Below are positions 1 through 64,000 of a stretch of DNA of 64,000 bases, piece by piece. The DNA comes from Macrostomum lignano (taxonomy: Eukaryota): NCBI GenBank assembly GCA_002269645.1, contig NIVC01002382.1, forward strand, positions 1 to 64,000, written 5' to 3'. The translations under genes were made by a program, and so were the position numbers. Under the pieces are notes generated by a model. The model was not told the origin of the DNA and searched no databases. It saw only the letters and a program-made list of their open reading frames with translations. The first letter of the stretch is position 1. Each line of letters begins with the position of its first letter.

Positions 1-911
1 AAACAAAATAATTTGATCGATTATTTAGATTGTGTTGCTAGGCGGCCACAATAATCAAAAGTTCGTAATGCCCTTGGCACAATGTTTGCGTTCCGGAAAA
101 TTCGGAATCAAAATTCATTCGATTTATGACGGCAATTTATGACCTTCGTGGCCGCAATCGCTTGATGAAGACTGAAATTCATTAAAATTCTGATTCCGTT
201 ATCAGAGTTTTGGATGGCCAAGCAAATCTCTTGAAGGGATTATCTGTAAGCTGCTGCCGCTAATGCTGTTAATCTGACTCACTAGAAGGGCTCTGACCTG
301 CCTCCTCTCCTTAAATCCCGCGCGCAGCGCTTGTAATTAATGTCTCCCCTCTCGACTGGAAATGCCGGTCCAAATAAACAGTCCGCTTTACTTTGCATTC
401 CCCCCAATGGCTGTAGGCAAAGGCTTCAATATATTGCATATTATATACTGCCTGCCTGCAATACTAGTATTCAGGGCGGGACACTGCGAAGCTCTGATTT
501 CAAGGAAAACACGGCAGCAAATAGAGGGGAGGATGGGGGGGGGGTAAGTGGGTGGGGGGAAGGAAAGGAAAGGAGCGATCGGTGAAAAATGCGAATACAT
601 TTAGCATAGGCCTTCGCCGCACCGGTTCAGCACTGCGGAGAGATTGAGATACAGCATAAGGCATAGCATAGAATATAACGGTTCGGCATTGAACAAAAAT
701 AGAGGCAGGAAGATGGCTTAGGCAAATTTTCTATTGGCCCATGGCCCCCATTGGATCGTATTGATTGCACAGTCACCTCGCCTCTGTAGCGCAGCTGCAG
801 CATGCATATAAATGCATGCAACCGGCACTAGCCCGGCAAGCCTGCCTGCACACTGACTGTCCTGAATACCGCTTCATCGGCCAGTCTTTCTTTGTCAAGC
901 AACTCTGCACA

Positions 912-3900
912 ATGCTGCTGTTGAGGGCCCTCATTCTGGCTTTGCCAGCTGCTGCGGCTCTGGTGACCTCTGACTCCAGCTGCAGACAGGCGGCAGTCCC
1001 GGCCGACTGCTCTAGGAGGGACCTGCGCCGCTGCGGCCGTCCGATAGCCAGCCGGTGCCAGTCGGCATCGCCGAGCATGCCCAGGCCTCGGTGGTGCCGT
1101 TGCTGCATCGACTGCGACACCGCTAGACTTGGCGCCGATGCCGGCGCCACCGTAGGCGACAAGACCAGCTCGCGGCGCCAACTGCGACGGCGACTGCGTC
1201 GACTTGTGCGACGTCTCGGCGCTAATCGCGACGCAGCTGACGGTCGGCGGCTGCCAGCAGCCCGGCGCGACCGGATGATGGAGCAGCTGCTGGATCTGGA
1301 GCTGCGCCTGCTCAGCCTGAGAAAACGCAGGCGCAAAAGTGCAAAAAGAGGCCGAAAGAAAAACACAAGGAATGCAGCAGCAGCTGAGACTGCAGTCTCG
1401 GCAGGCAAAAGCAAAATTGGAGGCGGCCGCGGTGCCTGGAGCCCTGGCAGTCTGGAGCAGCAATATTTTGTTGACAGACCGGCCTCTCAAACAGGTGCGG
1501 CCAACTCAGCTGAGAACGGCACTGAGGCCAGCTCAGGCCGGATTCTGGCTTTGATGAGCTATCTGGAGGGGCAGAGGACGGATAAAGTGAAAGGTAGGTG
1601 GCTTGGTGTGTACTATAGGTTCCGGGTTCGATGCACGAGCAAAACTATTAAAGTACTTTCAAAAGCCCAAAACTTGGTAACCTGAAACTTCATAATTCCT
1701 AGCCTATACACGGAGTGCTTTATTATAACAACCGTTTGGGGTTGCTGGGGTTGCAAATTTCTGAATCGCCCAAGTGGTTTCACATTCACACGCTCACACA
1801 GGGTGAACAGCGGCCCTGACTTTTTAATTGTCAGGCATTTACACTCTGTGTGCCCTGGGGGTTGGCCCTCATGGCTGTGAATCGCACTTCAACCATGGGT
1901 CAATTTTTCGTTCACAAGCCCCAAGTGAATGAGTGTTTGCGCACGGAATCGAACCAAGGGATCGCGGCCCGAGAGTCAGGCGCCTTTGCCGCGAGCTGCT
2001 CTGCATTTCGAACCTATCGATCTACTCTCGTAATTAAAAAATGCAAAATTAAACAGTCTTCAGTGTAGAGAGTTAAGTGTTGAAACGCTCATCAACTGCT
2101 ACACCTGTGTTGTTCGGATTTTAACCTCGAGTTGAAAAAATTGCGCAGCGACTCTGGCAATTTTAACGCACTGCAAATTTCAAACCATATTTATAGTTAC
2201 GCGTGCAGTCGGCGGGAGTGCAGAGCGCGCAGTTGCGTCAATCAGGGCTTGCCATGCAATTTGGCCTGGCCAGACTATTTGCATAGCAACTAGGTCTGTC
2301 ACCAAATCTATGTGAACCATTAATTAGATCTAGGCACAGTTTAGATTAGAAAACCATAAACTGGCCTGCGAAACAAGGACTGTCAGCTACAGCTGACCTG
2401 CCCAAAGTGCCATTAGGGGGGGGGAAGTGAAGTTCAGTTCCTGATTAAGTGTAGTTGGGAATTTTTGTAGTGCTTCCCGTGATAAATTTGAACCGGAAAT
2501 CTTGAGGAAAAGTTCCAAAGTTTAAAAACCTAACCTATTGACTCAAGAAGACAGAGACAGAATGGATGGAATTCTAGCAAAATTTATCAAAGACATGACA
2601 CAAGCCAGGTTGCAACTGCCCTGAAGGCTTCACATTTTTTTCTTTGAAAATTTAATAATCTGCCCCCTCTCGTGCACATTTACTAATAGTAGTACAATAA
2701 AAAAATAATATTCAAACCCCATATTCGAGCTGTCAACCGTTCGCAATGCTAAGCAAAAAAGCAAAGCATTCAAAACGAAACAAATGTGGGTCCCGGTCGC
2801 ATCTTTTAGGCTTGAAAATTTCTATACACCTCCTGTGTATAGCTATAGGGTATATTTTTATTGTGCACTAAACAACAGGAAGAGAGCAATGATGCCAGTT
2901 CGCTGGGGCGAAAGACTGACTCCCTCTCTGCCTTTCTCTCTCACTGTACGAGCCAGCTGTTTTTCACCCCCATTGTGTTGTAAATAAGCCTATTGAGCGT
3001 CTCATTGAAAGGCAACAATAAGGTTGCTCATCGAGTCCATGCAGATATAAGAGGCGAACGCAGTGCAATAAAAATGTGCAAAGACAGCGCAGCAGGCTGC
3101 AACACTGGAAGAGCCAAAGGCACGCAGGCCGGCCACCGCCATGATTCCCGCCGCGCTAGTCGAAGCCGTCCAACGGGACAGCGTCGATGCTCTGCGCCGC
3201 CTGCTGACCTCCACGCCGCCGTCGCCCGACACTCTGTCGGCTGCCCTGGCGCTGGCCGCCGCCCTGCCCTGCCAGCTGGAAACGGCGGCCGTCTTGCTGG
3301 AATTCGGCGCCAACCCGGAGCGCGCCTTGGCCCTGGTAGCCGCCTGCGATCAGGACAGGCGCGACTGTCCGGAATTGGCGCGCCTATTGGTGGCGCGCGG
3401 CGCCAGCGTCAACCAGGTCAGCCGGCCGGACGGCAAGCCGGCGCTGCTGCTGGCGGTGCGGCGCGGCCACGCGGGCCTGACGCGCCAGCTGATTGAGGCT
3501 CGAGCCGACGTCAACCTGGCTGAGCCGAATCTCCGCTGGACGCCGCTGCTGGCTGCCGTCAGCATCGACCGGCCGGATCTGGCCAAGCTGCTCCTGGATG
3601 CCCGCGCCGACCCCAACGCCATGAGCTCGGACGGCACTGCGCTGGCAATGGCCGCCTGCCGCGGCCATCCCGGCCTCGTCCGCCTCCTGCTCGATCGCCG
3701 AGCCGATCCGAATCTCTGCGCACCCGTTGACCCGGATGCGAAACCGGATGCGGACCAGGACGCTGATCCGGACGATCTGGACAGCTACAGCCCGCTGGCC
3801 TACGCCGCCTGCAACGGGCACCGCGAGTGCGTGGAGCTCCTGCTGCGAGCCGGTGCGCGGCCCGACACCCCGACAAGCGCACTGGGCCGCACGCCGCTAA

Positions 3901-6900
3901 TCCTGGCCGCCCTGAACGGCCACGCCGGCGTCGCTGCCGCCCTGCTGGCCGCCGGCGCCAACCCGAATCTGGCCGAACCGCTCCACCGCTGGACGCCGCT
4001 AGTAACGGCGGTGCACACCGACGCCGTCGAGGTTGTGAATGTCCTCCTGGCCGACCGGCGGACCGACGTCAACTGGCTGACCGACGACGGCACCGCTCTG
4101 GCCAAGGCGGCCGAGGCTGGCAACGTTGCCTTGGTGACGCGCTTGCTGTCGGCCGGGGCAGACGCCGACAAAGCCGACGAGGTGGACGGGCACACGCCGC
4201 TGATGTGGGCGGCCCAGTCCGGCCACGCTGGAGCCATCGAGCGCCTACTGAGCCGCGGTGCCCGGCCGGAGCGCGAGAACTCGGCCGGCCAGTCGGCCAT
4301 CCTGCTGGCCGCCTGCAACGGCCATGCCGCGGCTCTGGAGCAGCTGCTGAGGCGCTCGGAAAGCAGCGCCGCGAAGCAGCAGGCGGTCAACGCCGCCATG
4401 CAGGCCGTGGCTGGCGACGCAGGCAGGCAGCTGGAGCCGGGCGTGGCTCGGCGCATTCGCAACCTGATGGAGACGGCTCGGGAAGAGTGAGTGCTCGGTT
4501 TGTTTGCTTTTAGCTCTGCCCATTGATACGGGTCTGCGAGAATTGTGCGATGAGCTTAATCTACAGGGGGCGCCAGCTACAGGGGGGGGCACCAGCTACA
4601 GAGGGGGCACCAGCTACAGGGGGGCACCAGCTACAGAGGGGGCACCAGCTACAGAGGGGGCGCCAGCTACAGAGGGGGCACCAGCTACAGGGGGCACCAG
4701 CTACAGAGGGGGCACCAGCTACAGGGGGGCACCAGCTACAGAGGGGCACCAGCTACAGAGGGGGCGCCAGCTACAGAGGGGCACCAGCTACAGAGGGGGC
4801 GCCAGCTACAGAGGGGGCGCCAGCTACAGAGGGGGCACCAGCTACAGGGGGGCACCAGCTACAGAGGGGGCACCAGCTACAGGGGGCACCAGCTACAGAG
4901 GGGGCACCAGCTACAGGGGGGCACCAGCTACAGAGGGGGCACCAGCTACAGAGGGGGCGCCAGCTAGAGAGGGGGCACCAGCTACAGAGGGGCGCCAGCT
5001 ACAGAGGGGGCGCCAGCTACAGAGGGGGCACCAGCTACAGGGGGGGCACCAGCTACAGTAGGGCTGGCTAGAAAAGTCCAGGACGCTGGCTGCTTACCGA
5101 CAACCTATTTCACGAGTAGAAGATAAGATTAGGCAGGAAAATCTCATAAATTCCGGGGTGAGTTCTCATGCTCTCATAGAAAGGCTTGACTAGATTGATT
5201 TTCCACTCGCTGTCTTGGTGCCTAAATAAAGGTAAACAAGTCTCATTTAAATAGTCCAGACTCAGTATTATGTTCACTTGAAGTACATTTGTTGGATTCA
5301 GATTGACTTCTTTTCGCGTCATAGATTTTATTTTAAATCCGCTCGTAATTCTTCACCATTTCAGAGTGGTGGAGAACCAGAGCAACAATCTGGTTGGCGG
5401 TCTGGTCTCGCCAAAGTCGGGCCGCTCTGTCAGGGACAGCAGCGGAGTTCCCGGCCAGCCGCCGCCGCCTCCGCCGCTGTCGCCGCCCCTGCAGCCCCTC
5501 CCGTAGTGAGCGGCACCATGACCCGACTGATCAGCAGCCAGACGGTGCTGCCACAGTGAGTTCTCAAAGAGGGTAGCTGAGATGCCAACTCTCAAAGAGG
5601 GTAGCTGAGATGCCAAACTCTCAAAGAGGGTAGCTGAGATGCCAACTCTCAAAGAGGGTAGCTGAGATGCCAAAACTCTCAAAGAGGGTAGCTGAGATGC
5701 CAACTCTCAAAGAGGGTAGCTGAGATGCCAAAACTCTCAAAGAGGGTAGCTGAGATGCCAACTCTCAAAGAGGGTAGCTGAGATGCCAACTCTCAAAGAG
5801 GGTAGCTGAGATGCCAACTCTCAAAGAGGGTAGCTGAGATGCCAACTCTCAAAGAGGGTAGCTGAGATGCCAACTCTCAAAGAGGGTAGCTGAGATGCCA
5901 ACTCTCAAAGAGGGTAGCTGAGATGCCAAAACTCTCAAAGAGGGTTGCTGAGATGCCAAACTCTCAAAGAGGGTTGCTGAGATGCCAAACTCTCAAAGAG
6001 GGTAGCTGAGATGCCAAAACTCTCAAGGAGGGTAGCTGAGATGCCAAAACTCTCAAGGAGGGTAGCTGAGATGCCAAAACTCTCAAAGAGGGTTGCTGAG
6101 ATGCCAAAACTCTCAAAGAGGGTAGCTGAGATGCCAACTCTCAAAGAGGGTAGCTGAGATGCCAACTCTCAAAGAGGGTAGCTGAGATGCCAACTCTCAA
6201 AGAGGGTAGCTGAGATGCCAAAACTCTCAAGGAGGGTAGCTGAGATGCCAACTCTCAAAGAGGGTAGCTGAGATGCCAAAACTCTCAAAGAGGGTTGCTG
6301 AGATGCCAAACTCTCAAAGAGGGTTGCTGAGATGCCAAACTCTCAAAGAGGGTTGCTGAGATGCCAAACTCTCAAAGAGGGTTGCTGAGATGCCAAACTC
6401 TCAAAGAGGGTAGCTGAGATGCCAAAACTCTCAAGGAGGGTAGCTGAGATGCCAAAACTCTCAAGGAGGGTAGCTGAGATGCCAAAACTCTCAAAGAGGG
6501 TTGCTGAGATGCCAAAACTCTCAAAGAGGGTAGCTGAGATGCCAACTCTCAAAGAGGGTAGCTGAGATGCCAACTCTCAAAGAGGGTAGCTGAGATGCCA
6601 ACTCTCAAAGAGGGTAGCTGAGATGCCAACTCTCAAGAGGGTAGCTGAGATGCCAACTCTCAAAGAGGGTTGCTGAGATGCCAAACTCTCAAAGAGGGTT
6701 GCTGAGATGCCAAACTCTCAAAGAGGGTAGCTGAGATGCCAAACTCTCAAGGAGGGTAGCTGAGATGCCAAAACTCTCAAGGAGGGTAGCTGAGATGCCA
6801 AAACTCTCAAAGAGGGTTGCTGAGATGCCAAAGCTCAAAGAGGGTTTACTCGTAGAAAAGTACAAAGATCTTTCACTCGCAATTGCTAAAACCTAAGTTC

Positions 6901-9900
6901 CGATTTTTTATCGCCATTTTCATCCCCAGCGGCTTCCTGCAGAGCCTGGACATCCGCCGCGACACCCTTCGGTACCTGAGCCAAGGTCATTTCGGCTGCG
7001 TCTACCAAGCCCAGCGCGCTGACGGTCACTACGTGGTGCTCAAAGTGGTGTCCGCTCCATTTCGGCCCAACCAGCCTGACCAGGCTAGCTCAGTCTCCGA
7101 GGCCAACCGGCGCGAGGTCGAACTGATGCAGGCGATGAGGCACCGGAACATTGTGCAGTTCTACACCGCCCAGCTGGTGCCCGGCTCGCTCGTCATCTGC
7201 ATGGAGTACATCCACGGCGAGAACCTCCGGCTGTACAGGCAGCGCCTCGGCAGCCTGGCAGAGTCATTGATCGTCAATTACCTGAGCCAGATCTGCCACG
7301 GCCTGAACTATGTGCACAGCCAGAATGTCTGTCATCGCGATGTCAAGTGCGAGAACATCATGCTGCAGCTGTCCACCGGCCTGGTGAAGATCATTGACTT
7401 CGGCTTGTCAAAGAAGATTCACGCCACTGAAGTGTACCATTCAGGAGTTGGCACCCTGCTGTGGATGGCCCCGGAGGTGCTGCTATTTGCCGAGGATCCG
7501 ACACGTCGTCGGCGGCGCTACGACCCGAAGGCCGCCGATGTGTACTCGCTCGGCTGCAGCCTGCACGAGCTGTGCACCGGGGTGCCGCCGCTGTACAGCG
7601 AGGAGGGCCCGGGCTTCCTCAAGTGCCTGTACCACGCCAAGCGGACCGATGAGCCGCTGCCCGAGGACGCCCTGCTGCGCTGCGGCATGAGCCAGAGCCT
7701 CCGCTCCTTCTATGCGGCCTGCGTAGCCAAGAATCCATTGGCCAGGCCGACCCTGCCGCAGCTGCTGGCGCATCCCCTCATTGTTGGAGCCGCCTACTGA
7801 CTCCTCTATTTAATGTATTGTTGCCGACTGACGGACCTTGGCGTTCACGAGTTCTATTAGAAATTCTGTTATTCAGACTGTACGGCTTTTTATTGAGAAA
7901 TTTATTCCAGCTGCAGATGCTAAAATATACAGCTCGAATTTATTGTTGGCTTGCTATCTTATAACTGATAGAATTCAATGGAGAGTGACAGTATTATCAG
8001 ATATTTACAGTACTATCAACAGTACTATCAACAGACTATCTACAGTGCTATCTACAGTACTATCTACAGTACTATCAACAGACTATCTACAGTGCTATCT
8101 ACAGTACTATCTACAGTACTATCAACAGACTATCTACAGTACTATCTATACAGTACTATCTACAGTACTATCTACAGTACTATCAACAGACTATCTACAG
8201 TGCTATCTACAGTACTATCTACAGTACTATCAACAGACTATCTACAGTACTATCTATACAGTACTATCTACAGTACTATCTACAGTACTATCTACAGTGC
8301 TATCTACAGTACTATCTACAGTACTATCTACAGTACTATCAACAGACTATCTACAGTACTATCTATACAGTACTATCTACAGTACTATCAACAGACTATC
8401 TACAGTACTATCTATACAGTACTATCTACAGTACTATCTACAGTACTATCTACAGTACTGTCTACAGTACTATCTACAGTATTATCTACAGTGCTATTTA
8501 CAGCACTATCTACAGTAATATTTACAGCAGTATACATCGACTATGATTATGATCAATTATGATATCTGCGGGCAGAGCAGCCCCGGCAGTTCGTGCAGTT
8601 CACAGCCATGAGGGCCAACCCCAAGGCACAGAGAGTGTACATGCCTGACGGTTAGAAAGTCAGGGCCACTGTACACCCCGTGTGTGAGTTCCTATTATGA
8701 TTTATTTTTAAAAAACTTAAATTTACTGCCAAGGCATAATAAAAGTTGCCGCCGAATCTCCACGCAGCCACCTGCCGTTCGGTGACCTGCAGCTGGGACA
8801 AGGGCCAGCTGTGCCTGGTAAACATCCAGGACCTGCCAATCTGCAGCTGCGTCACCAACGATCGCTGCCTCGCAGAACGGCGCAGACTTCGTCAACGCCG
8901 ACGCAACGGACGTCGCCGATCGGGAAGGCGTCGAGGTCGTCGGCGGCCGCGTCGCAACGGTTTGGACGGCCGGTCGAATGTCACGACGACGGAGTCGACG
9001 CCGCTGATTAAGCGGCAGTTCTTTGGCCGGGTCTGCGCCCTGCTGAGCGGCCTGCCTGCCGAGCGCAGCTACACCAGCCTCTGCCACATGCAGGCCGCCG
9101 CCTGCGCCAGCGACTCGCAGGTGAGCAGTCAGGGCGGCTGGATTCTCGAGAGTCAATTTGAGAACAGCACTGATTCTGTTTGAGAACAGCACAGATTCTG
9201 TTTGAGAACAGCACAGATTCTGTTTGAGAACAGCACTGATTCTGTTTGAGAACAGCACTGATTCTGTTTGAGAACAGCACTGATTCTGTTTGAGAACAGC
9301 ACAGATTCTGTTTGAGAACAGCACTGATTCTGTTTGAGAACAGGCCTAAATATGCTTATAAAGAGCAATAAATCTGTTGAAAACAGTTTTTTAAGCCTAG
9401 ATTAAAATCCCCCCAAGGGAGAATCGCCCCAAAGCACAGGTGAGAATCGCCCCAAAGCACAGGTGAGAATCGCCCCAAAGCACAGGTGAGAATCGCCCCA
9501 AAGCACAGGCAGAATCGCCCCAAAGCACAGGTGAGAATCACCCCAAAGCACAGTGAGAATCGCCTCAAAGCACAGGTGAGAATCACCCCAAAGCACAGGT
9601 GAGAATCGCCCCAAAACACAGGTGAGAATCACCCCAAAGCACAGGTGAGAATCGCCCCAAAGCACAGGTGAGAATCGCCCCAAAGCACAGGTGAGAATCA
9701 CCCCAAAACACAGGTGAGAATCGCCTCAAAGCACAGGTGAGAATCACCCCAAAGCACAGGTGCGAATCGCCTCAAAGCACAGGCAGAATCGCCTCAAAGC
9801 ACAGGTGAGAATCACCCCAAAGCACAGGTGAGAATCGCCTCAAAGCACAGGTGAGAATCACCCCAAAGCACAGGTGAGAATCGCCTCAAAGCACAGGTGA

Positions 9901-10349
9901 GAATCGCCCCAAAGCACAGGTGAGAATCACCCCAAAGCACAGGTGAGAATCGCCCCAAAACACAGGCAGAATCGCCCCAAAGCACAGGTGAGAATCGCCC
10001 CAAAGCACAGGTGAGAATCACCCCAAAGCACAAATGAGAATCACCCCAAAGCACAGGTGAGAATCACTCAAAGCCCATGTGAGAATCCTTCTGTCACTGC
10101 AAGAAAATCAAATTACAGTCTCAGCCAAGACAATTCACATTCAACCCAAAACTGAAAACAACTCCAATTAAGGTTCTGCGCCTGTCCAATGGCGCCTGCT
10201 CCAATCACGACCCGGAGTCGGAGGCCCTGGAGACTCTCACTAATCAAACGTGCGCCAGATGCCAGGCGCGCGGTTGGCGCGGCAGAGGCTGCAAAAAATG
10301 GCGCCGCAAATGCCGGAGGCCGCCGGTTCTGTCAAGTGACGAATTCTGA
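912..10349 (+). CDS. Secreted basic follistatin/Kazal-domain protein; proposed exons 912-1593, 8768-9120, 10173(or 10125)-10349
   Basis: Exon 1 has ATG 912, a signal peptide (MLLLRALILALPAAAA), a Cys cluster and a phase-1 donor AAAG|GTAGGT at 1593/1594. Exon 2 follows acceptor CACGCAG (phase 1) and encodes FOLN-like TCRSVTC..C..CSC plus Kazal VC..SYTSLCHMQAAAC, ending at CAG|GTGAGC. Exon 3 completes the Kazal domain (VLRLSNGAC) and stops at TGA 10347-10349. Exon 2-3 linkage is strong; exon 1 linkage is inferred from phase and shared Arg-rich composition. Confidence 0.65.
1785..2004 (-). mobile_element. tRNA-derived SINE, most complete copy of a family with 4 copies in the window
   Basis: Minus strand has a tRNA-like head with B box GGTTCGATTCC (1945-1955), a body shared with 8572-8690, 13809-13965 and 49857-49950, and a GTGTGAGCGTGTG-type tail. 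Confidence 0.7.
3141..4486 (+). CDS. Ankyrin-repeat protein, first coding exon (roughly 9-10 ANK repeats)
   Basis: 449-aa ORF with repeated TPL..AA..GH...V..LL..GADPN motifs. Donor GA|GTGAGT at 4486/4487 overlaps the in-frame TGA (4488-4490). Confidence 0.9.
4563..5057. repeat. ~18-bp minisatellite (CAGCTACAGAGGGGGCAC)n, intronic
   Basis: Tandem copies directly visible. Confidence 0.95.
5365..5554 (+). CDS. Linker exon between ankyrin and kinase exons (reading frame ambiguous)
   Basis: Acceptor CATTTCAG at 5364, GC-rich coding-like sequence and donor CA|GTGAGT whose phase 2 matches the kinase exon acceptor. Confidence 0.6.
5562..6845. repeat. 28-31-bp minisatellite (CTCAAAGAGGGTAGCTGAGATGCCAA(A)CT)n, intronic
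   Basis: Tandem copies start immediately after the splice donor. Confidence 0.95.
6930..7800 (+). CDS. Ser/Thr protein kinase domain exon, MAP3K/STE11-like
   Basis: Acceptor CATCCCCAG at 6929. Motifs: SQGHFG loop, VVLK, REVELM, HRDVKCEN, IIDFG, GTLLWMAPE, DVYSLGC. Stop TGA 7798-7800. The subfamily call is inference from GTxxWMAPE / TGxPP motifs. Confidence 0.9.
8000..8535. repeat. 12-bp minisatellite (TATCTACAGTAC)n
   Basis: Tandem copies directly visible; produces the spurious STVL/YYLQ ORFs. Confidence 0.95.
8572..8690 (+). mobile_element. Internally deleted SINE copy
   Basis: GCAGAGCAGC head start joined to the CACAGCCATGAGGGCCAACCCC...GTCAGGGCC...GTGTGTGAG body shared with 1785-2004. 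Confidence 0.65.
9160..9345. repeat. 22-bp minisatellite (GAGAACAGCACAGATTCTGTTT)n, intronic
   Basis: Tandem copies visible. Confidence 0.9.
9421..10085. repeat. 23-bp minisatellite (GGTGAGAATCGCCCCAAAGCACA)n, intronic
   Basis: Tandem copies visible. Confidence 0.95.
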
Positions 10350-11114
10350 GCAGTTCTGACTGCATCCTGGAGTCTGGTTGGCATCAAAAGTGAATAAAAT
10401 TCTTATTTGTTGTGAAGTTTCTTTTCCTGTTGTGTGCAGTTAAACAAAACTAATTAAAATAATTATTTTTCGCCCTAGTAGAAATGTAGCAAAGGCCGAG
10501 ATGCACTAGCGAGATAGGAATTGTTAGCACTTAAATTAAAAAATTGTCTGTGGTTGAAACCCCAATTATTGCAATACAATATTCTACATGTAATGTAAAA
10601 ACTTTAAAAATTCGAATTCCCTAACTCGCTAGACGCTAGTGCAGTTTGAGTTTGAAATGAAATTAAGTTGGCCTTCAAATAAACTTCCCTTTCTCTTACT
10701 ACCTGACTGGAATGAGGAAATCCTTTAGCAGGCTATTGATGATTGCCAATGAAAGAGATGAGAGAGAAGAGAGAAGAGAGCTGAGACGAGAGACAAGCCT
10801 TGAGCGGGCCTGGATTGCTATTGTGAAGTTTCAAAGTACCCGAGGGCTGGCCGGAGTTTAGAGCGTGAATTAAAGTCGGTCACAGTCATTATTTAATATT
10901 TATCTATCTATTTATTTATTTATTCATTTATTTTTTCACATAAGTCGACAACTCTCAGCCACAGATCTCTGAAACACTGCATGAATGGGCAAATTTTTTA
11001 GTTACTGATGATACTACTTACATTTGGGCGTCTGTTTAGAGTTTTGTCGTGATAGATTTGCGTTTCAAAAAGTTACTCAGCAGTCAAGCGAAATCTGCGT
11101 TCGGGAGTTTAAAT

Positions 11115-11698
11115 ATTGACTGCCGGCCATAGGTTAGGGTGGTTTAGGCTAGAGCTATGTTAAAGTTTAGGTTAGAGTTTATTTTAGGGTTTAGGTTAGG
11201 GTTTAGGTTAGGTTTTGAGTCAGAATTTAAGTTAGGGTTACAGTTTAGGTTAAGGTTAGAGTTTAGGTCAGGGTTACAGTTTAGGTTAAGGTTAGAGTTT
11301 AGGTCAGGGTTACAGTTTAGGTTAAGGTTAGAGTTTAGGTCAGGGTTACAGTTTAGGTTAAGGTTAGAGTTTAGGTCAGGGTTACAGTTTAGGTTAAGGT
11401 TAGAGTTTAGGTCAGGGTTACAGTTTAGGTTAAGGTTAGAGTTTAGGTCAGGGTTACAGTTTAGGTTAGGGTTAGGTTGGGGTTAGGGTTAGGGTTTTGG
11501 TTAGGGTTAGTGTTTAGGTTAGAGTTTAGGTTAGGGTTTAGGTTAGGTTTAAAGTTTAGGTTAGGGTTTAGGTTAGGGTTAGAGTTTAGGTTAGGGTTTA
11601 GGTTAGGTTTAAAGTTTAGGTTAGGGTTTAGGTTAGGGTTAGAGTTTAGGTTAGGGTTTAGGTTGGAGCTTAGGTTGGGCCCATGGTCGGCAGTCAAT
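11115..11698. mobile_element. TIR-bounded element filled with telomere-like TTAGGG-variant repeats
   Basis: ATTGACTGCCGGCCAT (11115-11130) and ATGGTCGGCAGTCAAT (11683-11698) are 15/16 inverted repeats. The interior is degenerate TTAGGG/TTTAGG with higher-order units. Confidence 0.6.
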
Positions 11699-12203
11699 TT
11701 GGGGTAGTTGATTTTTTGACAAATCGATTTTTCCGAGCTTTGGTGACGACTTCTTGTCAGGAACTATTAGCTTTGTAACTGAGGTAGAGGATGATTGCAT
11801 CTAGCTGCAGTGTTTCTAGATCTGTGCTTTGAATCCACTAATTTCACCGAAAGAATATAGCTGTCTAAATTTAGTGAAACTCGCAACATTTTTTGTTAAA
11901 AATTGCCTAACAACTTCTATAGCATAACAGCAGCCCGTTTCCACCCCAGTTGCAAACCCTAGCAAACATGCAGCTGTGCATCACCCACATAATCTTTCTA
12001 TTTTAAAACAAATCGCCAAGTTTTTGTGTAAATTCATGTTCGCTTGTGATTTTTTTGTTTCGCCTTGTTGTAGGAAAGCAAACAAAAATATAAGAAACAG
12101 CAGCAACAACATCTTTGAACCATCTTTTTGTTGCATGAGACATCTGCAAAACTTTTTTTGTTTCATGTTGTCCTTCTAAACAGTTGGAGTGAAAGCATGG
12201 AGG

Positions 12204-12480
12204 AGTCAGTCAGTCAGTCAGTCAGTCAGTCAGTCAGTCAGTCAGTCAGTCAGTCAGTCAGTCAGTCAGTCAGTCAGTCAGTCAGTCAGTCAGTCAGTCA
12301 GTCAGTCAGTCAGTCAGTCAGTCAGTCAGTCAGTCAGTCAGTCAGTCAGTCAGTCAGTCAGTCAGTCAGTCAGTCAGTCAGTCAGTCAGTCAGTCAGTCA
12401 GTCAGTCAGTCAGTCAGTCAGTCAGTCAGTCAGTCAGTCAGTCAGTCAGTCAGTCAGTCAGTTAGTCAGTCAGTCAGTCA
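12204..12480. repeat. (CAGT)n tetranucleotide microsatellite
   Basis: Near-perfect run of about 270 bp. Confidence 0.98.
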
Positions 12481-12735
12481 TCTACCTAATTTCTACAAAA
12501 AGCAAGTGCAGCGTTTGAGTGAGTTGTTCGGCGTTCAGTTTTGTTGTTGTAAAAAGCATCATCTAACACGAGAAACGAAAATATTGAACGCATCATTTAG
12601 GCTTGTTGAGGTGTTGAAACTTGTTATATTTTACACACAAAAGGATCAGCTTGGCCAACAGTAACCAATTATTAACCAATCGTATTGTTTTTTCTATAAT
12701 AAAGGGTTTTCAGTCATTTAGTATATTTATCCAAT

Positions 12736-13130
12736 TCAGACCAGGGCCATAGCTGGGCACATCTGCACGGCTACCTTAGGCAGGGTGCCAGTCTTTCCCA
12801 GGGACTCCAGGCACCAGCTGTTGGCGCAGCCCAGAAGGTCAACTTCCTGCAATTTTTTAAATATTGGCGATTTTAATTAAACAAATTCTATTCAAATAGC
12901 AGAGCATCATTGCTCAGATCTGTGCTCACCTTGCCCTCGCCGTGGAAGCAATAGTTGCAGACGAACAGGCAGCGCTGCCAGCCGGACATCTCGGCGAAGT
13001 GCTCCGTCTCAATGCCCTCGGGTACGCCGCCGGCTGAACCACCACCCGAACGGACGGTGAAGGCCTGGCAGCCGATGGCAGCGGCCAGGAGCAGGCAGGC
13101 GATGGCGGACAGGCAGGGGAGCTGGCTCAT
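12736..13130 (-). CDS. Eclosion-hormone-like cysteine-rich neuropeptide precursor; exons 13130-12930 and 12846-12736
   Basis: Signal peptide MSQLPCLSAIACLLLAAAIGCQA; 83-nt intron AAG|GTGAGC...TTGCAG|GAA. Spliced product ends RCLFVCNYCFHGEGKEVDLLGCANSWCLESLGKTGTLPKVAVQMCPAMALV* (C-x3-C-x2-C-x12-C-x4-C-x17-C). Confidence 0.75.
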
Positions 13131-13808
13131 GCTGATGCGCTTGGCGAGAGTCTTGCGATTAGCGGTAAAAATGCTTTGCTTGCAATAGCGACTCGGTCCG
13201 GGAGCTGAGCGATCGACACTGTGAGCTGGCCGTCCAGCCGGCGCCGGTGCTGCTCCTTTTAAGCGGCCACTTCCCCACCCCCATCCATGATTTCTTGGTC
13301 ACGAGTCGGTATAGCGATGCTCCGCTGAGCAGGAAGTGGAGCAGGTCTTGGGGCAATTTTTTGGGTCCTGATTGCTCTCTTCCTATAAGCTGCAGCCTCC
13401 TCAGTTGCCCCGGGGCTGGGCATGTATAATTGCATCGGTATCTTTGAAGCAACTGAGCTACGCCGAGCTTTTTCGAGCATACTCTCGAAAGCAATTTATA
13501 AACCGCTTTCGGCTGGATAAATTTGGAAATGCAGATTTCTCATAATTACAATTATTCCCTTCCCTGACGGAATTGCCTCAGGTCAGGTTGGTGAGGCAGG
13601 TCTTCTAGAACGGAAGGTTTTTTGTTTCCTGCAATTTTCTTGCTAGTTTTTCAAAGAGCGAAGTGGCAGCTATAAATATACACTGTGACTCAGTTCAGTC
13701 TCAAGTATTGAGCTGTTCTTGAATTGGAAGATGACACGATATGGCACTGCACAATATACACGCTATTACAGATTTTAGGTAAATTTAAACGTCATGTAGC
13801 GGGAGGTG

Positions 13809-13965
13809 GCAAAGCAGCTCAGTGTGGTAAACGGTCTGACTCTCGCTCTGCGACCCCAGGTTTGATCAATTTGACCAATCCCCAAGGCACAGAGAGTGTA
13901 CATGCCCGACGAATAAAAAAGTCAGGGCCGCTGTACACCCTGTGTGAGCGTGTGCGTGAGTTCGT
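13809..13965 (+). mobile_element. SINE copy with degenerate tRNA-like head
   Basis: GCAAAGCAGCTCAGTGTGG..CTGACTCTCG..GGTTTGATC head plus the shared CCCCAAGGCACAGAGAGTGTACATG...GTCAGGGCCGCTGTACACCCTGTGTGAGCGTGTG body. Confidence 0.65.
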
Positions 13966-14091
13966 GCCTGCGTACAGCATTGGCGAGGTTGTGTGCTCAG
14001 GAGTCACCATGACGTTGTGTGACCATGTCGCCAAAGGCGTTTTGCCAGGATGCCTGCAAGCCTTCTTCATTAGTGTTACGCGGTATTGTAT

Positions 14092-14941
14092 TATAGCATT
14101 TTCCAAGCCAATTGAGCCTAGGAGCAAGCAATTTAACCCTTATTGGGAGAATCAAGCTATTGAAGACTTGTTTTTAATTGTCTATGGCCCGAAAGGGGGT
14201 CTATGGAGCAACCAATTTGAGAATCTGGGCGCGCAATTAATCCTTTTCACAGTGCTCGTGTATCCTTCACAAATAACTTCACTGAAATAATGTCTGCAAG
14301 TAGATGGCATATCAAAAAACGATTGACATTAACACTTTGATTTCAGAGAAACCAATCAAAACAGGCAAATGCAAAACCATAGCATACAGTAAAGCCGAGA
14401 ACAATCGTGTCTCTCAAAACAGTGTTGGACAGATTGAAATCAAACCCGATCAATGTTCAGAGCTCTTCAACGTCATTAGAGGATTGCTATCCAGTGATAA
14501 AAGAAGCAGTTGCATGTGTTGCTCTTCCAGTTACGATGCTCGATCTCCACCCCCTCGTGCGCGGCCCCGGCGTCCCGTGATTTCATAGCGACGCCTGTTA
14601 GAATACACTGTTTTTCTCTTTACGTCCAGCCATCGCGAAATGTCCGCAGCACTATCACATTTCTCGATAGCAGCGACAATCAGGACGTACTTTTCGTTGC
14701 TTATCTCGCGATAGGGTTCTCGCCCTGCAGGATTCTGCTCAACCACTGCATCTTGGGCTGTAGCAAAACTTTTGTCACTGCTCTGCTCGCTAAATTATTC
14801 GCCTGCTATATTTATGTTTGTTTGCTCCATAGACCCCCCATTCGGGCCATAGACAATGAAAAATAAGTCTTCAATAGCTTGATTTTCCCACTAAGGATTA
14901 AATTGTTTGCTCCTAGGCTCAATTGGCTTGAAAAAGCTATA
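14092..14941 (-). mobile_element. Non-autonomous Tc1/mariner-type DNA transposon with long TIRs
   Basis: About 120-bp inverted repeats (..AAGCCAATTGAGCCTAGGAGCAA..CTATGGCCCGAA..GTCTATGGAGCAA) with TA ends. The internal minus-strand frame 14531-14746 encodes an HTH-like remnant (ISRWLDVKRKTVYS..RRYEITG..RGGG). Confidence 0.75.
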
Positions 14942-15191
14942 TTACTCCATTTATTAGCGACCGCAATGTTTATCGGTTATTATTTGTCGGGTATACAGTA
15001 CATACGCACACCCGCGCACAGATTCTTCGGAAGTCTTGGCCACAGACATTTTGCAGAATTAGCTGCATGCTGAGAATTCTCGTTCGCTCATTCATAGGCA
15101 AGAAAGCAAAGTAAGCCTGGCAGCGCTGATTCCATAACTCAAAAATCTGTTGGAACAGCTGTCAGCAGCTCCTCAAAGTACACTTAAAATA

Positions 15192-15548
15192 ATGAACAAT
15201 AGCGCTTGCAGCGCTGACTGGCAGCTAGCGGCTTGTAGGCGGCCTCGTAGGCCCTGCACAGATTCCAGCGTGAACTGGAAGGACTGCGTGCATCGCTGGA
15301 AACGAAGCCGAGACAAATGGCGATTCGAGGCTGTCGGCCTGCAAAAGCAACTGTACGAGCTGACGGGCAGCGCGCAGCACTGGAGTCGTCAGGCGAGCGC
15401 GGCCCAGTCCCAGCTGGCCCAGGCGCGAGGCGCTCTGAACGGCTGGCGGGCTGACACCTACCGCGGCAGGGAATCGGCCGGCCAGTGGAAGGCTCAAGCA
15501 ATCGGCTGGCGCGAGGAGGCCCGGCGTTGGAAGCTGAACTGCGGTTAG
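15192..15548 (+). CDS. Orphan 118-aa coiled-coil protein with Trp heptad periodicity
   Basis: GC-rich ORF in an AT-rich context. Trp at residues 29, 36, 43, 64, 85, 99, 106 and 113 (all the same position mod 7), Leu at 50 and 57. Confidence 0.55.
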   Translation: MNNSACSADWQLAACRRPRRPCTDSSVNWKDCVHRWKRSRDKWRFEAVGLQKQLYELTGSAQHWSRQASAAQSQLAQARGALNGWRADTYRGRESAGQWKAQAIGWREEARRWKLNCG

Positions 15549-17060
15549 CTGATGGACCGAAAGGACGACAGGCAGATTGGCCTGATGTGCCGGGCCAGGC
15601 AAACACAGCGCGCCGAGCTGCTGCGCAACCAGTTTAGCGGGTGATGTCAATAGATCTACTGTTCGCCGCTTTCTTAATGGATTGTGTCAAACGCATTGAG
15701 CTATCGAAAGCGGAGCTCCGGAGAAATATTCGTGTGATGCTTTTTTCATCAAGACTATCGAAAATAAAGTCATTTTTATTTTAACCGCAGGTGCTTAGGT
15801 TTTTTTTTCTGAAAAAATTCATAACAAGCCTTCAACGACTTTGTTGTTTTATGTTTGTGCATAAATCGAACTAAAAAGAAATTTAATATCTACCCAGCCG
15901 GCCCCGTCGACGAGTTCTCGTTTTAACTGTTATTACACTTAGCCGTAAGAAATAGGCGAAGTTGCTGCATTGCGTATTGGCTTTATGGTAGACAACGCAT
16001 GCATGTTACCATTGATGTGTTCCTTACTACCAAGACTTTGTTAGTAATCAAGGAACAATCACTTCTAGCTACACTGCTATAGGCAACCCAGTAATCCAAT
16101 GAAGCTAGGTATCTCTTACCTTGATTCCTGATCAGTTGTTCGCTTCTTGAGTCTTGTTCTCTTTCTTAATTAGTCTCGTTTCTTATCTTCCGGAAGTTTA
16201 GACGTCTTGAATCAGTTGTTCTGGTCCTGGTTCCTCTTGTACTTCCAATGAAGTCGTCTCCGACCGGTATCTGTGCCTCAAATCAGAAGCTTCAAATCAA
16301 CAATAGGGATCCCTGCGCCGCGCTGCGGTTTCAAATAAGCCTTCTCCTTCTAGCAGTGTCTTAAATACACTCTAGGTATAGCTCCGGTAATCACTGATAG
16401 TCCTCTGGTGACTACGAGTATCAGGGTAGTCCTTCTGGAGACTACAAACAATGGAGTCGCAATTAGACTCAGTAACAACAATAATATCGAGTCGACTCTA
16501 ACACCTGGTGCAAATGAGTAGGGCTTACCGCAAGAACTCAGCCGAGTCTCGGTTGACTTGGTCTGAAGGAAGTTCCTCGCCGACTTGCTCTTCGGAGCTC
16601 TTCTTCCCTCTGGAAGGTTCTCTGTAGCCTCTGTTGTTGCTCCGGTCCGCTTGTCGGACCACTTGTATTTATAGGCGATTTTGCTAACTATAATTATAGC
16701 AACATGACTCATGTGTTTCACATTAAATAGTAACATGATTCATTTTGGGTTATAAATAGTATCATGATTCACTCCTTTGCTATAAATATTATCATGATTC
16801 ATAGTTAACGTTTCGGTGCGCATGTGTGCTTTGTTCTACTTACAGTAACATTCTATGAATAAACTACATTAACAATTTTTATCATTTTTGTGGGAAGTAG
16901 AATAACACTACACCATATGCATACTTGTATATGGTACCGCGGTCCTGCGCTGAACGCTCTCTTAACACTGCATATCCCTCTATATCAAGCACGCAATCGA
17001 ATCGGAACTACGTAAGCTCATACAGCAACATTTTGATGTTTATGCATGAATAAATGATAT

Positions 17061-17767
17061 TGTGACGAATAAGGCGAATAAGACGGTCTTGTGTAGCGGT
17101 TAATTTAGATAGTTTACGATTAGTTAGCAGATCGGCAAGCCGCTTCCACCCTTAGACTTTTTACTTTTACTAGTGCTACTTAAAATTGCTGGATCAGTTG
17201 ATTAACTAATTAATTGGTGGGCCAAGGTAGACGGCGGAAGAGTTGGTGTAAGGAGGCCAGATAGCGTCACAGCTAAGGGTTAGCGAGCCTAGGTCGAGAA
17301 GCGAAGCAAGGGCCGAAGGGCGAGAGCGGCTGCTGACTGTAGCGTAAGCATATATTTAAAGGTAAACAGATACCAACACCCTTAATCCAAACCCCAGGCA
17401 AACAACCCCCCACGCGGCGCGCAATGTACATGTACAAAGTAATCGATAAAATATATCATGCAAGAATAATTAACATACGTCAGTACATGTACATAGGTAG
17501 AACTACTTTACGAGAAATAATAACGATATGAATGAAATACAAATAATATAATAAATACATACGAGGCTACAAAAACAAAGCAATTAACAGTAAAAATAGC
17601 GCGATAATAATATGTACGAATTGTACGAACGAACAATTGTATGTACGAACCGTACTAACTCATTTTACCATTTATTGGTAAAATAAATGAAAGAATACAG
17701 TAGTAGTACGGTATGCATATGAAAATAAACAAATACGATACACGCTTCTACGAATCACACTGTCACA
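17061..17767. mobile_element. Solo LTR (707 bp)
   Basis: TGTGAC...GTCACA termini flanked by a 4-bp ATAT direct repeat on both sides; internal TATA-like TATATTTAAA. Confidence 0.6.
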
Positions 17768-18087
17768 ATATACATGTATACAGATGTAAATTTCACACAC
17801 GTTGCAGATGTTAGAAGGCAATAAATACGCATGTACATGCATTACTGTACACGTGTTGTACTATGCACGCATAAAAAGCTTACGATTAGCCTTGACTTGA
17901 CTAGATCAGAATAAAAAGTTGTACATATAGTTTGTGTGCAGAGCCACCTGATCCGCTCAAACAAACTACAGGCATCAACAGCATCATGATATGTAAATGA
18001 ATGCACATGTAGTCGTTTTTATAGCGAGTTACAGTTGCTCAGTAATTGGTGCTTAAAAATCTATCGTATTCTGACTATAATATCTTA

Positions 18088-18215
18088 TTTCCTGCAAGCG
18101 GGTATCGGATTGCAAAAGGGATGCCACCCCGCCGCAGTCACATTGCAATCTTATTTCCAGCAAGCGGGTATCGGATTGCAAAAGGGATGCCACCCCGCCG
18201 CAGTCACATTGCAAT
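18088..18215. repeat. Two-copy direct repeat (~70-bp period)
   Basis: GCAAGCGGGTATCGGATTGCAAAAGGGATGCCACCCCGCCGCAGTCACATTGCAATC occurs twice. Confidence 0.85.
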
Positions 18216-18650
18216 CACACCGGAGTAATCACATTGAGAAGATAAAACTGTACAAAGTTTTGTAAAATGTGTCTAGTTTTATTTTTAAGCCAGGTCATGA
18301 CATTTTGAAATTTATAGCTTTGATACACAATATTAGCACTTACTTTTATGTGTTGTTTTGAACTTTTTCCTATAAATGTTGACGCGCGTGTCAGTTTCTA
18401 TGAAACAGTATTTTTTGACCTGACATTTGTCTACACTCAAACTCATCAGCCTTGTTAGAAATTTACATAGTAGTAGGGCTGATTAAATAATATCTATCAT
18501 ACTTGACACAGGCCTATTAGTAATTAGTAATCATTAAGGCTGTCTACTGCTATATTCTAACTACTGCTGCTCGAGGGTGTTTGGTTTCAATTTTTTAAGC
18601 TCTATTTGCCATTGCCAGTTAGGTATGATAACTCATCATGCGATGCTCAT

Positions 18651-63987: not shown

Positions 63988-64000
63988 GTGAGATTACCTG

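What the first reader, a model, noticed from the sequence alone, without database searches (positions are those of the whole stretch)
912..10349. Ankyrin/kinase locus appears nested on the same strand inside intron 1 of the follistatin-like gene
Seen: the FOLN-Kazal exon (8768) needs a phase-1 upstream exon with a signal peptide. The 7800-8767 gap holds only a minisatellite and a SINE. The signal-peptide exon at 912 ends in a phase-1 donor (join reads KVK-A-TCRSVTC) and shares the Arg-rich style. The intervening 7.2 kb contains complete ankyrin and kinase exons with their own ATG and stop. Same-strand nesting is unusual because splice sites compete.
Basis: inference. Interest (0 to 1): 0.7.

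Follow-up and report, generated by a model that had tools for sequence, protein, structure and literature searches.

The report
Kinase gene nested in flatworm intron
In the flatworm Macrostomum lignano, a three-exon ankyrin-repeat kinase gene lies on the same strand inside the 7.2-kb first intron of a small secreted cysteine/arginine-rich protein gene; the arrangement is real, but the public genome record already annotates it and it is an ordinary kind of gene nesting.

Summary
Exon 912-1593 ends in a phase-1 donor (AAG|GTAGGT). Joined to 8768-9120 and 10173-10349 it gives an open 403-aa reading frame with the junction KVK-A-TCRSVTC.

The window is bases 1-64000 of GenBank contig NIVC01002382.1 (Macrostomum lignano, assembly Mlig_3_7). 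That record already annotates this host gene (BOX15_Mlig029094g2, 813-10349) and a nested same-strand gene (BOX15_Mlig024801g1, from 3141). The same host/nested pair is annotated on two other contigs. One of these is a truly diverged copy. The annotation was built from RNA-seq, so the 1593^8768 join very probably rests on spliced reads, but I could not see the reads.

- The ankyrin and kinase parts are one three-exon gene (3141-4486, 5365-5555, 6930-7800; 802 aa when intact).
- The window copy has GG where two other copies have GGG at about 5451-5453. This breaks the frame and is probably an assembly error.
- "Follistatin-like" rests only on a 10-cysteine pattern and a Kazal match below Pfam's threshold. 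The host protein has no homologue outside its own locus among 1.84 billion representative proteins.
- Same-strand nesting is common in animals.

Low interest; already known.

The parts
912..1593 (+). Host gene coding exon 1: signal-peptide-like N-terminus, an 8-cysteine stretch, Arg/Lys-rich and helical stretches. It ends in phase 1 at the donor AAG|GTAGGT. GenBank starts the CDS at 813/816, but the ATG at 816 is deleted in the diverged copy L003, so 912 is the conserved start.
1594..8767 (+). Host intron 1 (7174 nt), which contains the whole nested gene. The acceptor is CTCCACGCAG|CC.
1787..1990 (-). SINE-like dispersed repeat with a tRNA B-box-like head (GGTTCGATTCC on the minus strand). Its core, 1795-1887, is the inverted partner of 8593-8684.
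3141..4486 (+). Nested gene exon 1: ATG in the context GCCACCGCCATGA, about 11-12 ankyrin repeats, donor AGA|GTGAGT. The in-frame TGA at 4488-4490 lies inside the donor.
4487..5364 (+). Nested gene intron 1, mostly an 18-nt minisatellite (4565-5063). The acceptor is CCATTTCAG|AG. The array is almost absent in copy L003.
5365..5555 (+). Nested gene exon 2 (linker). It is 191 nt here and 192 nt in L001 and L003. The window has GG where they have GGG at about 5451-5453, which shifts the frame, so GenBank ends the product at 5506 (495 aa).
5556..6929 (+). Nested gene intron 2, almost entirely a 28/29-nt minisatellite (5562-6845). Donor ACA|GTGAGT, acceptor CATCCCCAG|CG.
6930..7800 (+). Nested gene exon 3: a complete protein kinase domain (Lys in VVLK, HRDVKCEN, DFG, APE). 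Its closest solved relatives are STE-group kinases (TAO2, ASK1, MAP4K1). Stop TGA at 7798-7800.
8002..8527 (.). 12-nt minisatellite (TATCTACAGTAC, about 44 copies) in the gap between the nested gene and host exon 2.
8593..8684 (+). Core-only copy of the SINE-like repeat, 87% complementary to 1795-1887. It lies 83 nt before the host acceptor.
8738..8743 (+). The only canonical AATAAA between the kinase stop and host exon 2, 24 nt upstream of the host acceptor. A variant AATATA lies at 7924.
8768..9120 (+). Host exon 2: FOLN-like six-cysteine half, a roughly 30-residue arginine run, and the first three cysteines of the Kazal-like half. Donor CAG|GTGAGC.
9121..10172 (+). Host intron 2 (phase 0), filled by a 22-nt (9157-9343) and a 23-nt (9419-10087) minisatellite. 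The acceptor is AATTAAG|GT.
10173..10349 (+). Host exon 3: the end of the Kazal-like half (VLRLSNGAC) and a basic tail with 5 cysteines. Stop TGA at 10347-10349; AATAAA at 10393.

Best explanation
This is an ordinary host/nested gene pair in the Macrostomum lignano genome.

The host gene (BOX15_Mlig029094g2) has three coding exons: 912-1593, 8768-9120 and 10173-10349. It encodes a 403-aa lineage-restricted protein that is probably secreted. The protein is 18% Arg and has 22 Cys. It contains one follistatin-module-like 10-cysteine unit, interrupted by an arginine run.

The host's 7.2-kb first intron contains, on the same strand, one complete three-exon gene (BOX15_Mlig024801g1). When intact, this gene encodes an 802-aa protein with N-terminal ankyrin repeats and a C-terminal STE-like Ser/Thr kinase domain.

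Shown here: the exon structure, the reading frames, the annotation, and the same arrangement in a diverged second copy.

Inferred:
- The nested gene is transcribed from its own start just upstream of 3141 and polyadenylated before 8768.
- Host transcripts read through it and remove it with intron 1.
- The two genes avoid interference mainly by being expressed in different cells or at different levels.
- The frameshift in the window copy (GG instead of GGG) is most likely a homopolymer error of the PacBio-based assembly.
For: - Identity of the window. It equals NCBI contig NIVC01002382.1:1-64000. Locus L004 is identical to window 1-20349.
- Annotation on this contig. Called genes are 813-10349 (+, 436 aa) and, nested in it, 3141-5506 (+, 495 aa).
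- Host protein. P0124, P0001 and P0123 equal the join 1593^8768 and 9120^10173.
- Other contigs. The same pair is called on NIVC01004886.1 (435 aa + 540 aa) and on NIVC01002599.1 (403 aa + 765 aa).
- Diverged copy. NIVC01002599.1 differs by real substitutions, about 1.5% in the upstream half, and keeps all the splice sites.
- Source of the annotation. It derives from RNA-seq and mapped de novo transcripts (PMC5730564).
- One ankyrin-kinase gene. The 540-aa, 765-aa and ML2-derived 448-aa models all cross 4486^5365 and 5555^6930 in one frame.
- Frame-breaking lesions. Each copy carries a different one: GG vs GGG in the window; an 8-bp deletion plus a duplicated stretch of about 110 nt in L001; CC vs CCC in L003.
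- Domains. Ank_2 E = 1.7e-90 and Pkinase E = 4.2e-57. The closest solved kinases are STE-group, E about 1e-28.
- No alternative first exon. None has a consensus donor in the right phase in 7801-8767.
Against: - I could not inspect RNA-seq reads, so the junction 1593^8768 is supported only through the annotation's provenance and through frame and splice-site consistency.
- Exon 1 shows no sign of purifying selection between the two diverged copies. There are 10 substitutions, 7 of them non-synonymous, at a rate equal to the intron's.
- No homologue of the host protein exists anywhere else in the databases searched, so its being a functional protein is not independently supported.
- No TATA[AT]A[AT] match lies in the 340 nt before the nested ATG (only a weaker ATATAAG at about 3046).
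- No canonical polyA signal closely follows its stop. The nested gene's independent transcript ends are therefore inferred.
- The nested acceptors at 5364 and 6929 look at least as strong as the host acceptor at 8767. How host transcripts skip them is unexplained.
Confidence: 0.85

Rival explanations
1. The locus is a single transcription unit with mutually exclusive processing. One primary transcript starts upstream of 912. It is then processed in one of two ways. Either it is cis-spliced 1593^8768, giving the host mRNA and destroying the nested gene. Or it is processed inside the intron, by SL trans-splicing or an internal 5' end near 3141 followed by cleavage at a polyA site before 8768, giving the kinase mRNA. 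This would be an operon-like arrangement inside an intron.
For: - M. lignano trans-splices about 30% of its genes, and about 15% of its genes sit in operons (PMC8629364).
- About 7% of assembled transcripts are multi-gene precursors (PMC5730564).
- The only canonical AATAAA after the kinase stop lies 24 nt before the host exon-2 acceptor.
- No TATA[AT]A[AT] match precedes the nested ATG.
Against: - The SL acceptor motif [T/C]TNCAG is absent from the roughly 750 nt upstream of ATG 3141. The nearest matches end at 2063 and 2392.
- An SL acceptor with a donor upstream at 1594 would be expected to be cis-spliced instead.
- Host and nested genes carry different cluster names in the annotation.
- An out-of-frame upstream ATG at 3074 argues for a 5' end within about 65 nt of the start codon.
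Confidence: 0.1
2. The host join is an annotation artefact. Exon 912-1593 would be a stand-alone single-exon gene that reads through the donor to the stop at 1683-1685 and uses the ATTAAA at 1647. The FS-like exons would belong to another transcript or be non-coding.
For: - The ORF continues for 30 codons past the donor to a stop, and ATTAAA lies at 1647.
- Exon 1 evolves at the intron rate.
- The host protein has no homologues.
- The donor GTAGGT departs from the species consensus GT[G/A]AG at position +4.
Against: - Three independently annotated contigs give the identical join.
- The frame stays open across two junctions with canonical GT-AG sites.
- The phase-1 FS-like exon has no other candidate first exon.
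- A spliced leader would not supply an in-frame ATG at 8768 (my reading of the SL sequence given).
- Chimeras from de novo assembly do not normally skip 7 kb at canonical splice sites.
Confidence: 0.04
3. The nested gene in this particular copy is a real pseudogene or a two-ORF allele. Under this reading the GG (not GGG) at about 5451-5453 is a true mutation. This copy would then make a 495-aa ankyrin-only protein. The kinase ORF, with its ATG at 5518 only 11 nt after the stop, would be untranslated or translated by reinitiation.
For: - The assembled sequence and the GenBank model (495 aa, 3141-5506) say so.
- The DV1 line carries extra chromosome copies in which redundant genes could decay (PMC5730564 and PMC8629364).
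Against: - The difference is a 1-nt contraction of a homopolymer in a PacBio-based assembly.
- The sister contig L002 differs from the window in the exon windows compared only by indels (47 gap columns, mostly 1-3 nt, one run of 23; no substitutions), the signature of assembly error.
- The other copies carry different frame-breaking indels elsewhere in the gene. The one in L003 is also a homopolymer contraction.
- The diverged copy L003 and the older ML2 assembly both keep the fused frame.
Confidence: 0.15

Closest known systems
Host/nested (intronic) gene pairs of animal genomes. Examples from my own knowledge: F8 with F8B, the NF1 intron genes, and many Drosophila and C. elegans pairs. Surveyed for mouse and human in PMC11694760.
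   Same: A complete protein-coding gene lies inside a long 5' intron of an unrelated host gene. Both orientations occur at broadly similar frequency, and nested genes favour long, 5'-most introns.
   Different: Nothing essential differs. The nested gene here contains introns and is on the same strand, which is the less favoured but well-documented class. The organism also has SL trans-splicing, so a shared primary transcript is conceivable.
Follistatin-module (FS = FOLN + Kazal) proteins: follistatin, FSTL, SPARC, agrin
   Same: There are ten cysteines spaced C-x4-C-x7-C-x9-C-x-C-x5-C ... C-x15-C-x6-C-x13-C. The C-terminal half matches Pfam Kazal_2 positions 20-48. The module starts at a phase-1 intron, as FS exons typically do (my own knowledge).
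   Different: - The Kazal_2 score is below Pfam's cut-off (18-19.7 vs 22.8 bits).
- FOLN gives no hit.
- No PDB or database homologue was found.
- There is only one module.
- Roughly 55 residues separate cysteines 6 and 7, including an arginine run of about 30.
- The Kazal half is split by a phase-0 intron.
- The N-terminal 227 residues are unrelated to any known family.
Ankyrin-repeat protein kinases. From my own knowledge, TNNI3K and ILK have N-terminal ankyrin repeats with a C-terminal kinase, and ANKK1/RIPK4 have the reverse order.
   Same: Ankyrin repeats and a kinase domain sit in one polypeptide, with ankyrin N-terminal as in TNNI3K and ILK. The catalytic motifs are intact.
   Different: The kinase domain is closest to STE-group kinases (TAO2, ASK1, MAP4K1), not to the TKL group of TNNI3K and ILK. 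No orthologue was found outside M. lignano.
SL trans-spliced operons of M. lignano (PMC8629364)
   Same: Same-strand genes could share a primary transcript, and a polyA signal lies close to a downstream acceptor.
   Different: The downstream 'gene' (the FS-like exons) is cis-spliced to an upstream exon rather than trans-spliced. No SL acceptor motif lies near the nested gene's start.

Membership tests
Nested intronic gene pair (same strand) | The nested gene lies wholly within one intron of the host. | tested here: met
   The nested CDS 3141-7800 lies inside host intron 1594-8767.
Nested intronic gene pair (same strand) | The host exons flanking the intron are joined in mature mRNA. | tested here: met
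   GenBank CDS models on three contigs equal the join 1593^8768. The annotation is RNA-seq based. The reads themselves were not inspected.
Nested intronic gene pair (same strand) | The nested gene has its own transcript, with independent 5' and 3' ends. | not testable with these tools
   It is annotated as a separate gene with a different cluster name. No 5'-end or polyA read data are available here. Promoter and polyA motifs are weak or ambiguous.
Follistatin-module (FOLN+Kazal) proteins | A Pfam Kazal match above the gathering score. | tested here: not met
   Kazal_2 scores 18.0 bits, or 19.7 bits with the Arg insert removed, against a cut-off of 22.8.
Follistatin-module (FOLN+Kazal) proteins | A FOLN domain match. 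| tested here: not met
   No FOLN hit at E <= 10.
Follistatin-module (FOLN+Kazal) proteins | Ten-cysteine FS spacing. | tested here: met
   Read directly from the translation: C-x4-C-x7-C-x9-C-x-C-x5-C, then an insert, then C-x15-C-x6-C-x13-C. The comparison with the follistatin spacing is from memory, so it is a lead and not a test.
Follistatin-module (FOLN+Kazal) proteins | Detectable homology to follistatin, FSTL, SPARC or agrin. | tested here: not met
   phmmer against 1.84 billion representatives found only a fragment of the same locus. The PDB search gave nothing relevant. The AlphaFold2 model was too poor to compare folds (pLDDT 50.8).
Ankyrin-repeat Ser/Thr kinase | Ankyrin repeats and a protein kinase domain in one reading frame. 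| tested here: met
   Pfam Ank_2 1.7e-90 and Pkinase 4.2e-57. Models of 765 aa, 540 aa and 448 aa span both parts. In the window copy the frame is broken by 1 nt.
Ankyrin-repeat Ser/Thr kinase | Catalytic motifs are present (beta-3 Lys, HRD, DFG, APE). | tested here: met
   VVLK, HRDVKCEN, DFG and WMAPE are visible in the translation.
M. lignano SL trans-spliced operon | An SL acceptor ([T/C]TNCAG) at the 5' end of the downstream gene, a short repeat-adjusted distance after the upstream gene. | tested here: not met
   No motif lies within about 750 nt upstream of ATG 3141. Only about 44% of SL sites carry the motif, so this test is weak.

The most novel reading that the evidence does not exclude
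The host intron may be built so that the nested gene is skipped. An inverted pair of SINE-like repeats brackets the entire nested gene. One arm (1795-1887) lies 201 nt after the host donor. The other (8593-8684) lies 83 nt before the host acceptor. In a host pre-mRNA the two could form a duplex of about 93 bp. The predicted energy is -174.6 kcal/mol, against -60.7 +/- 5.6 for shuffles. Such a duplex would loop out the nested gene's stronger splice sites and bring 1594 and 8767 together.

The only canonical polyA signal after the kinase stop abuts the host acceptor. Duplex formation could therefore decide whether a transcript becomes host mRNA or kinase mRNA.

Nothing here tests this. The opposite orientation of two copies of a dispersed repeat has an even chance of occurring by accident.
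Probability: 0.08. Interest if true: 0.45.

Novelty: already known. Interest (0 to 1): 0.15.

Why it matters
It matters little beyond bookkeeping. Both genes and their nesting are already in GenBank (PAA58362.1 and PAA58363.1 on NIVC01002382.1), and nested same-strand genes are a known, common feature of animal genomes.

Three points are useful:
- The nested gene should be read as one 802-aa ankyrin-repeat STE-like kinase. All four contigs carrying it in Mlig_3_7 hold a different frame-breaking indel, so every GenBank product for it is truncated or partly out of frame.
- The host's start codon is more likely 912 than 816.
- The host is an orphan Arg/Cys-rich, probably secreted protein, not a follistatin orthologue.

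If the inverted-repeat bridging idea were true, the locus would be a compact test case for how same-strand nested genes escape splice-site competition.

Tried and rejected
1. Homologues of the host protein.
   - The word-indexed search found only its own cluster.
   - A full phmmer scan of 1.84 billion representatives found only a 69-aa fragment of the same locus.
   - The test 'do orthologous loci lack the insert' could therefore not be run.
2. Orthologues or paralogues of the nested gene.
   - Only same-locus copies turned up, plus generic ankyrin proteins at about 30% identity.
   - P0003 and P0129 looked like 79% paralogues. They are the same gene read through assembly frameshifts.
3. AlphaFold2 on the host protein without an alignment gave pLDDT 50.8, so no fold search was run.
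4. The FS-like module was searched with the Arg insert removed. Against PDB, only a meaningless EGF hit at E = 7.7 appeared. Pfam stayed below threshold.
5. Rfam on the whole window and ARAGORN on 1-12000 found nothing.
6. Published information on the genes.
   - The gene identifiers Mlig029094, Mlig024801 and Mlig008546 occur in no searchable paper.
   - They do not occur in the held supplements of PMC5816591.
   - PMC8629364 has no held supplements.
7. I considered that the inverted SINE pair marks a transposon-borne insertion of the nested gene and rejected it as unsupported. The repeat is a dispersed SINE-like element with other copies in the window, and the downstream arm is a truncated core.
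8. I considered that the FS-like exons form an SL-trans-spliced downstream operon gene and rejected it. The ATG that ends the SL would be out of frame and runs into a stop after 5 codons (the SL sequence read).


Full report
**What the window is.** Searching with the joined protein returned a 100% identical Macrostomum lignano protein, BOX15_Mlig029094g4. Its cluster holds three GenBank versions: g2, g3 and g4. Looking up g2 (P0124, PAA58362.1) returned contig NIVC01002382.1 of assembly GCA_002269645.1 (Mlig_3_7). The first 20,349 bases of that contig are identical to the window. The window is therefore bases 1-64000 of that contig.

**Check of the observation.**
- The ORF from ATG 912 runs to 1593, which is 682 nt, so it ends in phase 1. 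The donor is AAG|GTAGGT.
- The acceptor is CTCCACGCAG| at 8767.
- Exon 8768-9120 is 353 nt with donor CAG|GTGAGC.
- Exon 10173-10349 follows the acceptor AATTAAG| and ends in TGA.
- The N-terminus MLLLRALILALPAAAALV is strongly hydrophobic.
- The gap 7801-8767 holds a 12-nt minisatellite (8002-8527) and a roughly 90-nt dispersed repeat (8593-8684). A longer, inverted copy at 1787-1990 has a tRNA B-box-like head, which fits a SINE.
- No ATG-started ORF in the gap reaches a GT[AG]AG donor in phase 1.

**Independent support for the join.**
- GenBank calls a gene at 813-10349 (+, 436 aa, 5'-partial) on this contig. Inside it, GenBank calls a second gene at 3141-5506 (+, 495 aa, ankyrin).
- The host product equals my three-exon join plus 33 upstream residues.
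- The same pair is called on NIVC01004886.1 (435 aa at 10001-19750, with a 540-aa ankyrin product at 12327-16423).
- It is also called on NIVC01002599.1 (403 aa at 10001-19782, with a 765-aa ankyrin + kinase product at 12230-16954).
- A fourth contig, NIVC01001985.1, is collinear. In the exon windows compared it differs from the window only by indels, mostly 1-3 nt, with no substitutions. Only fragments are annotated there.
- The GenBank annotation is the 'coregenes' subset of a genome-guided transcriptome. It was built with STAR, StringTie and TACO, with BLAT-mapped de novo transcripts, and with boundaries cut at trans-splice and polyA signals (PMC5730564). The junctions therefore come from RNA data, but I could not see the reads.

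**The diverged copy.**
- NIVC01002599.1 (L003) differs from the window by true substitutions. The rate is about 1.5% from the upstream flank through the ankyrin exon, and zero from the kinase exon onward.
- L003 keeps the host donor and acceptor, so the nesting predates this duplication.
- In L003 a 15-bp deletion removes the ATG at 816 and the TATAAAT at 807, and GenBank starts that CDS at MLLLRAL.
- Exon 1 carries 10 substitutions between the copies, 7 of them amino-acid changing. That rate is about the intron rate, so there is no visible constraint.

**The nested locus is one gene.**
- The ankyrin ORF's TGA (4488-4490) lies inside a consensus donor, AGA|GTGAGT.
- Splicing 4486^5365 and 5555^6930 links the ankyrin exon, a 192-nt linker exon and the kinase exon into one 802-aa frame.
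- Three models cross both junctions in that frame: the 540-aa and 765-aa GenBank models, and a 448-aa model from the older ML2 assembly.
- The window copy has CCCGGCC where L001 has CCCGGGCC and L003 has CCTGGGCC. This 1-nt homopolymer contraction ends the annotated product at 5506. It also makes the ATG at 5518 look like a separate start for the kinase.
- L001 instead has an 8-bp deletion and a duplicated stretch of about 110 nt at the start of the kinase exon. L003 has a 1-nt deletion at window position 7660.
- A different indel in each contig, with few or no exon substitutions, points to assembly error rather than biology. A real frameshift allele cannot be excluded.

**What the two proteins are.**
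- Nested protein: Pfam Ank_2 (1.7e-90) and Pkinase (4.2e-57). VVLK, HRDVKCEN, DFG and WMAPE are all present. The closest solved kinases are STE-group (TAO2, ASK1, MAP4K1; E about 1e-28). No orthologue was found outside M. lignano.
- Host protein: 18% Arg and 22 Cys. Exon 1 has no Pfam match.
- Exons 2-3 of the host show a 10-cysteine pattern like a follistatin module, with an arginine run inserted.
- Kazal_2 reaches only 18-19.7 bits against a cut-off of 22.8, and FOLN does not hit.
- A full HMMER scan of 1.84 billion representatives finds nothing outside the locus.
- 'Follistatin-like' is therefore a description of a pattern, not a family assignment. The many RR/RRR/KRRRK clusters could be convertase processing sites, but that is speculation.

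**How it probably works.**
- Shown: the gene structures.
- Inferred: the nested gene has its own 5' end just upstream of 3141. The start context GCCACCGCCATGA is good, and an out-of-frame ATG at 3074 argues for a start downstream of it.
- Also inferred: host transcripts read through the nested gene and splice it out with intron 1.
- The nested acceptors (CCATTTCAG at 5364 and CATCCCCAG at 6929) look at least as good as the host acceptor.
- The linker exon has both an acceptor and a donor, so 1593^5365 chimeras are expected to compete. Exon 1 joined to the linker exon stays open, but then stops early in the kinase exon.
- Separate expression domains are the simplest resolution.

**The shared-precursor rival.** M. 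lignano trans-splices about 30% of its genes and has operons (PMC8629364), so a shared precursor is a fair rival. However, no [T/C]TNCAG motif lies within about 750 nt of the nested ATG.

**Two further features of the intron.**
- The only canonical AATAAA after the kinase stop sits 24 nt before the host acceptor.
- An inverted SINE pair brackets the nested gene, 201 nt after the donor and 83 nt before the acceptor. It could form a duplex of about 93 bp (-174.6 kcal/mol against -60.7 +/- 5.6 for shuffles). This could loop the nested gene out of host pre-mRNA, but I have no test of it.

**Comparison with what is known, and verdict.**
- Host/nested pairs involve over a tenth of mouse and human genes and sit preferentially in long 5' introns. 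They are only slightly biased toward opposite orientation (PMC11694760).
- The arrangement here is a member of that known class and is already in the public annotation.
The claim of rarity was not.
- Interest is low.

Noticed in passing
window 9419-10087, 4565-5063, 8002-8527, 5562-6845: Every intron segment of both genes is filled by its own minisatellite, and the units carry splice-site-like motifs. The 23-mer in host intron 2 repeats a perfect donor consensus, CAG|GTGAGA, 22 times (23 occurrences in the whole window). The 18-mer and 12-mer units each contain CTACAG, which matches the species' acceptor/SL motif [T/C]TNCAG. The 28/29-mer contains GGTAGCTGAG 33 times. I do not know whether this reflects how the arrays arise or affects splicing.
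   Followed up: partly
window 5451-5453; L001 16227-16423; L003 16925; L002 throughout: Four Mlig_3_7 contigs carry this locus, and each breaks the ankyrin-kinase frame with a different indel. As a result the GenBank products (495, 540, 765 and 593 aa) are all truncated or partly out of frame. In the exon windows compared, L002 differs from the window only by indels, with no substitutions.
   Followed up: yes
window 6930-11100 vs L003 16195-20530: Divergence between the two true copies is mosaic. It is about 1.5% substitutions from the upstream flank to the ankyrin exon, and zero substitutions from the kinase exon to 750 nt past the host stop. This suggests gene conversion or a collapsed or chimeric assembly.
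   Followed up: no
window 8738-8743: The only canonical AATAAA between the nested gene's stop (7800) and host exon 2 lies 24 nt upstream of the host acceptor at 8767.
   Followed up: partly
window 1795-1887 and 8593-8684: Inverted copies of a SINE-like repeat (87% complementary over 93 nt) bracket the nested gene inside the host intron. Further copies of the core lie at 13875-13946 and 49855-49941.
   Followed up: partly
window 803-830 vs L003 about 9905-10000: A 15-bp deletion in the diverged copy removes both the TATAAAT at 807 and the ATG at 816 that GenBank uses as the host start on two contigs. The host's promoter and transcription start therefore remain undefined.
   Followed up: partly
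window 28928-30406 (+), 32125-32829 (+), 25432-26667 (-), 42932-43870 (-), 62543-63988 (+): Other long ORFs in the window give these Pfam hits: an ataxin-10 domain (1.4e-18); a CSTF1 dimerisation domain plus WD40 (2.1e-22); a coiled-coil/low-complexity ORF with many weak hits; a weak MFS/sugar-transporter match; and a weak WW match. These are ordinary neighbouring genes.
   Followed up: no
L001 4968-5465 and L003 6676-7173: On the longer sister contigs a ribosomal protein L24e gene lies about 3-5 kb upstream of the host gene on the same strand. The window (contig start) begins only 815 nt upstream of the host CDS, so its upstream context is cut off.
   Followed up: no
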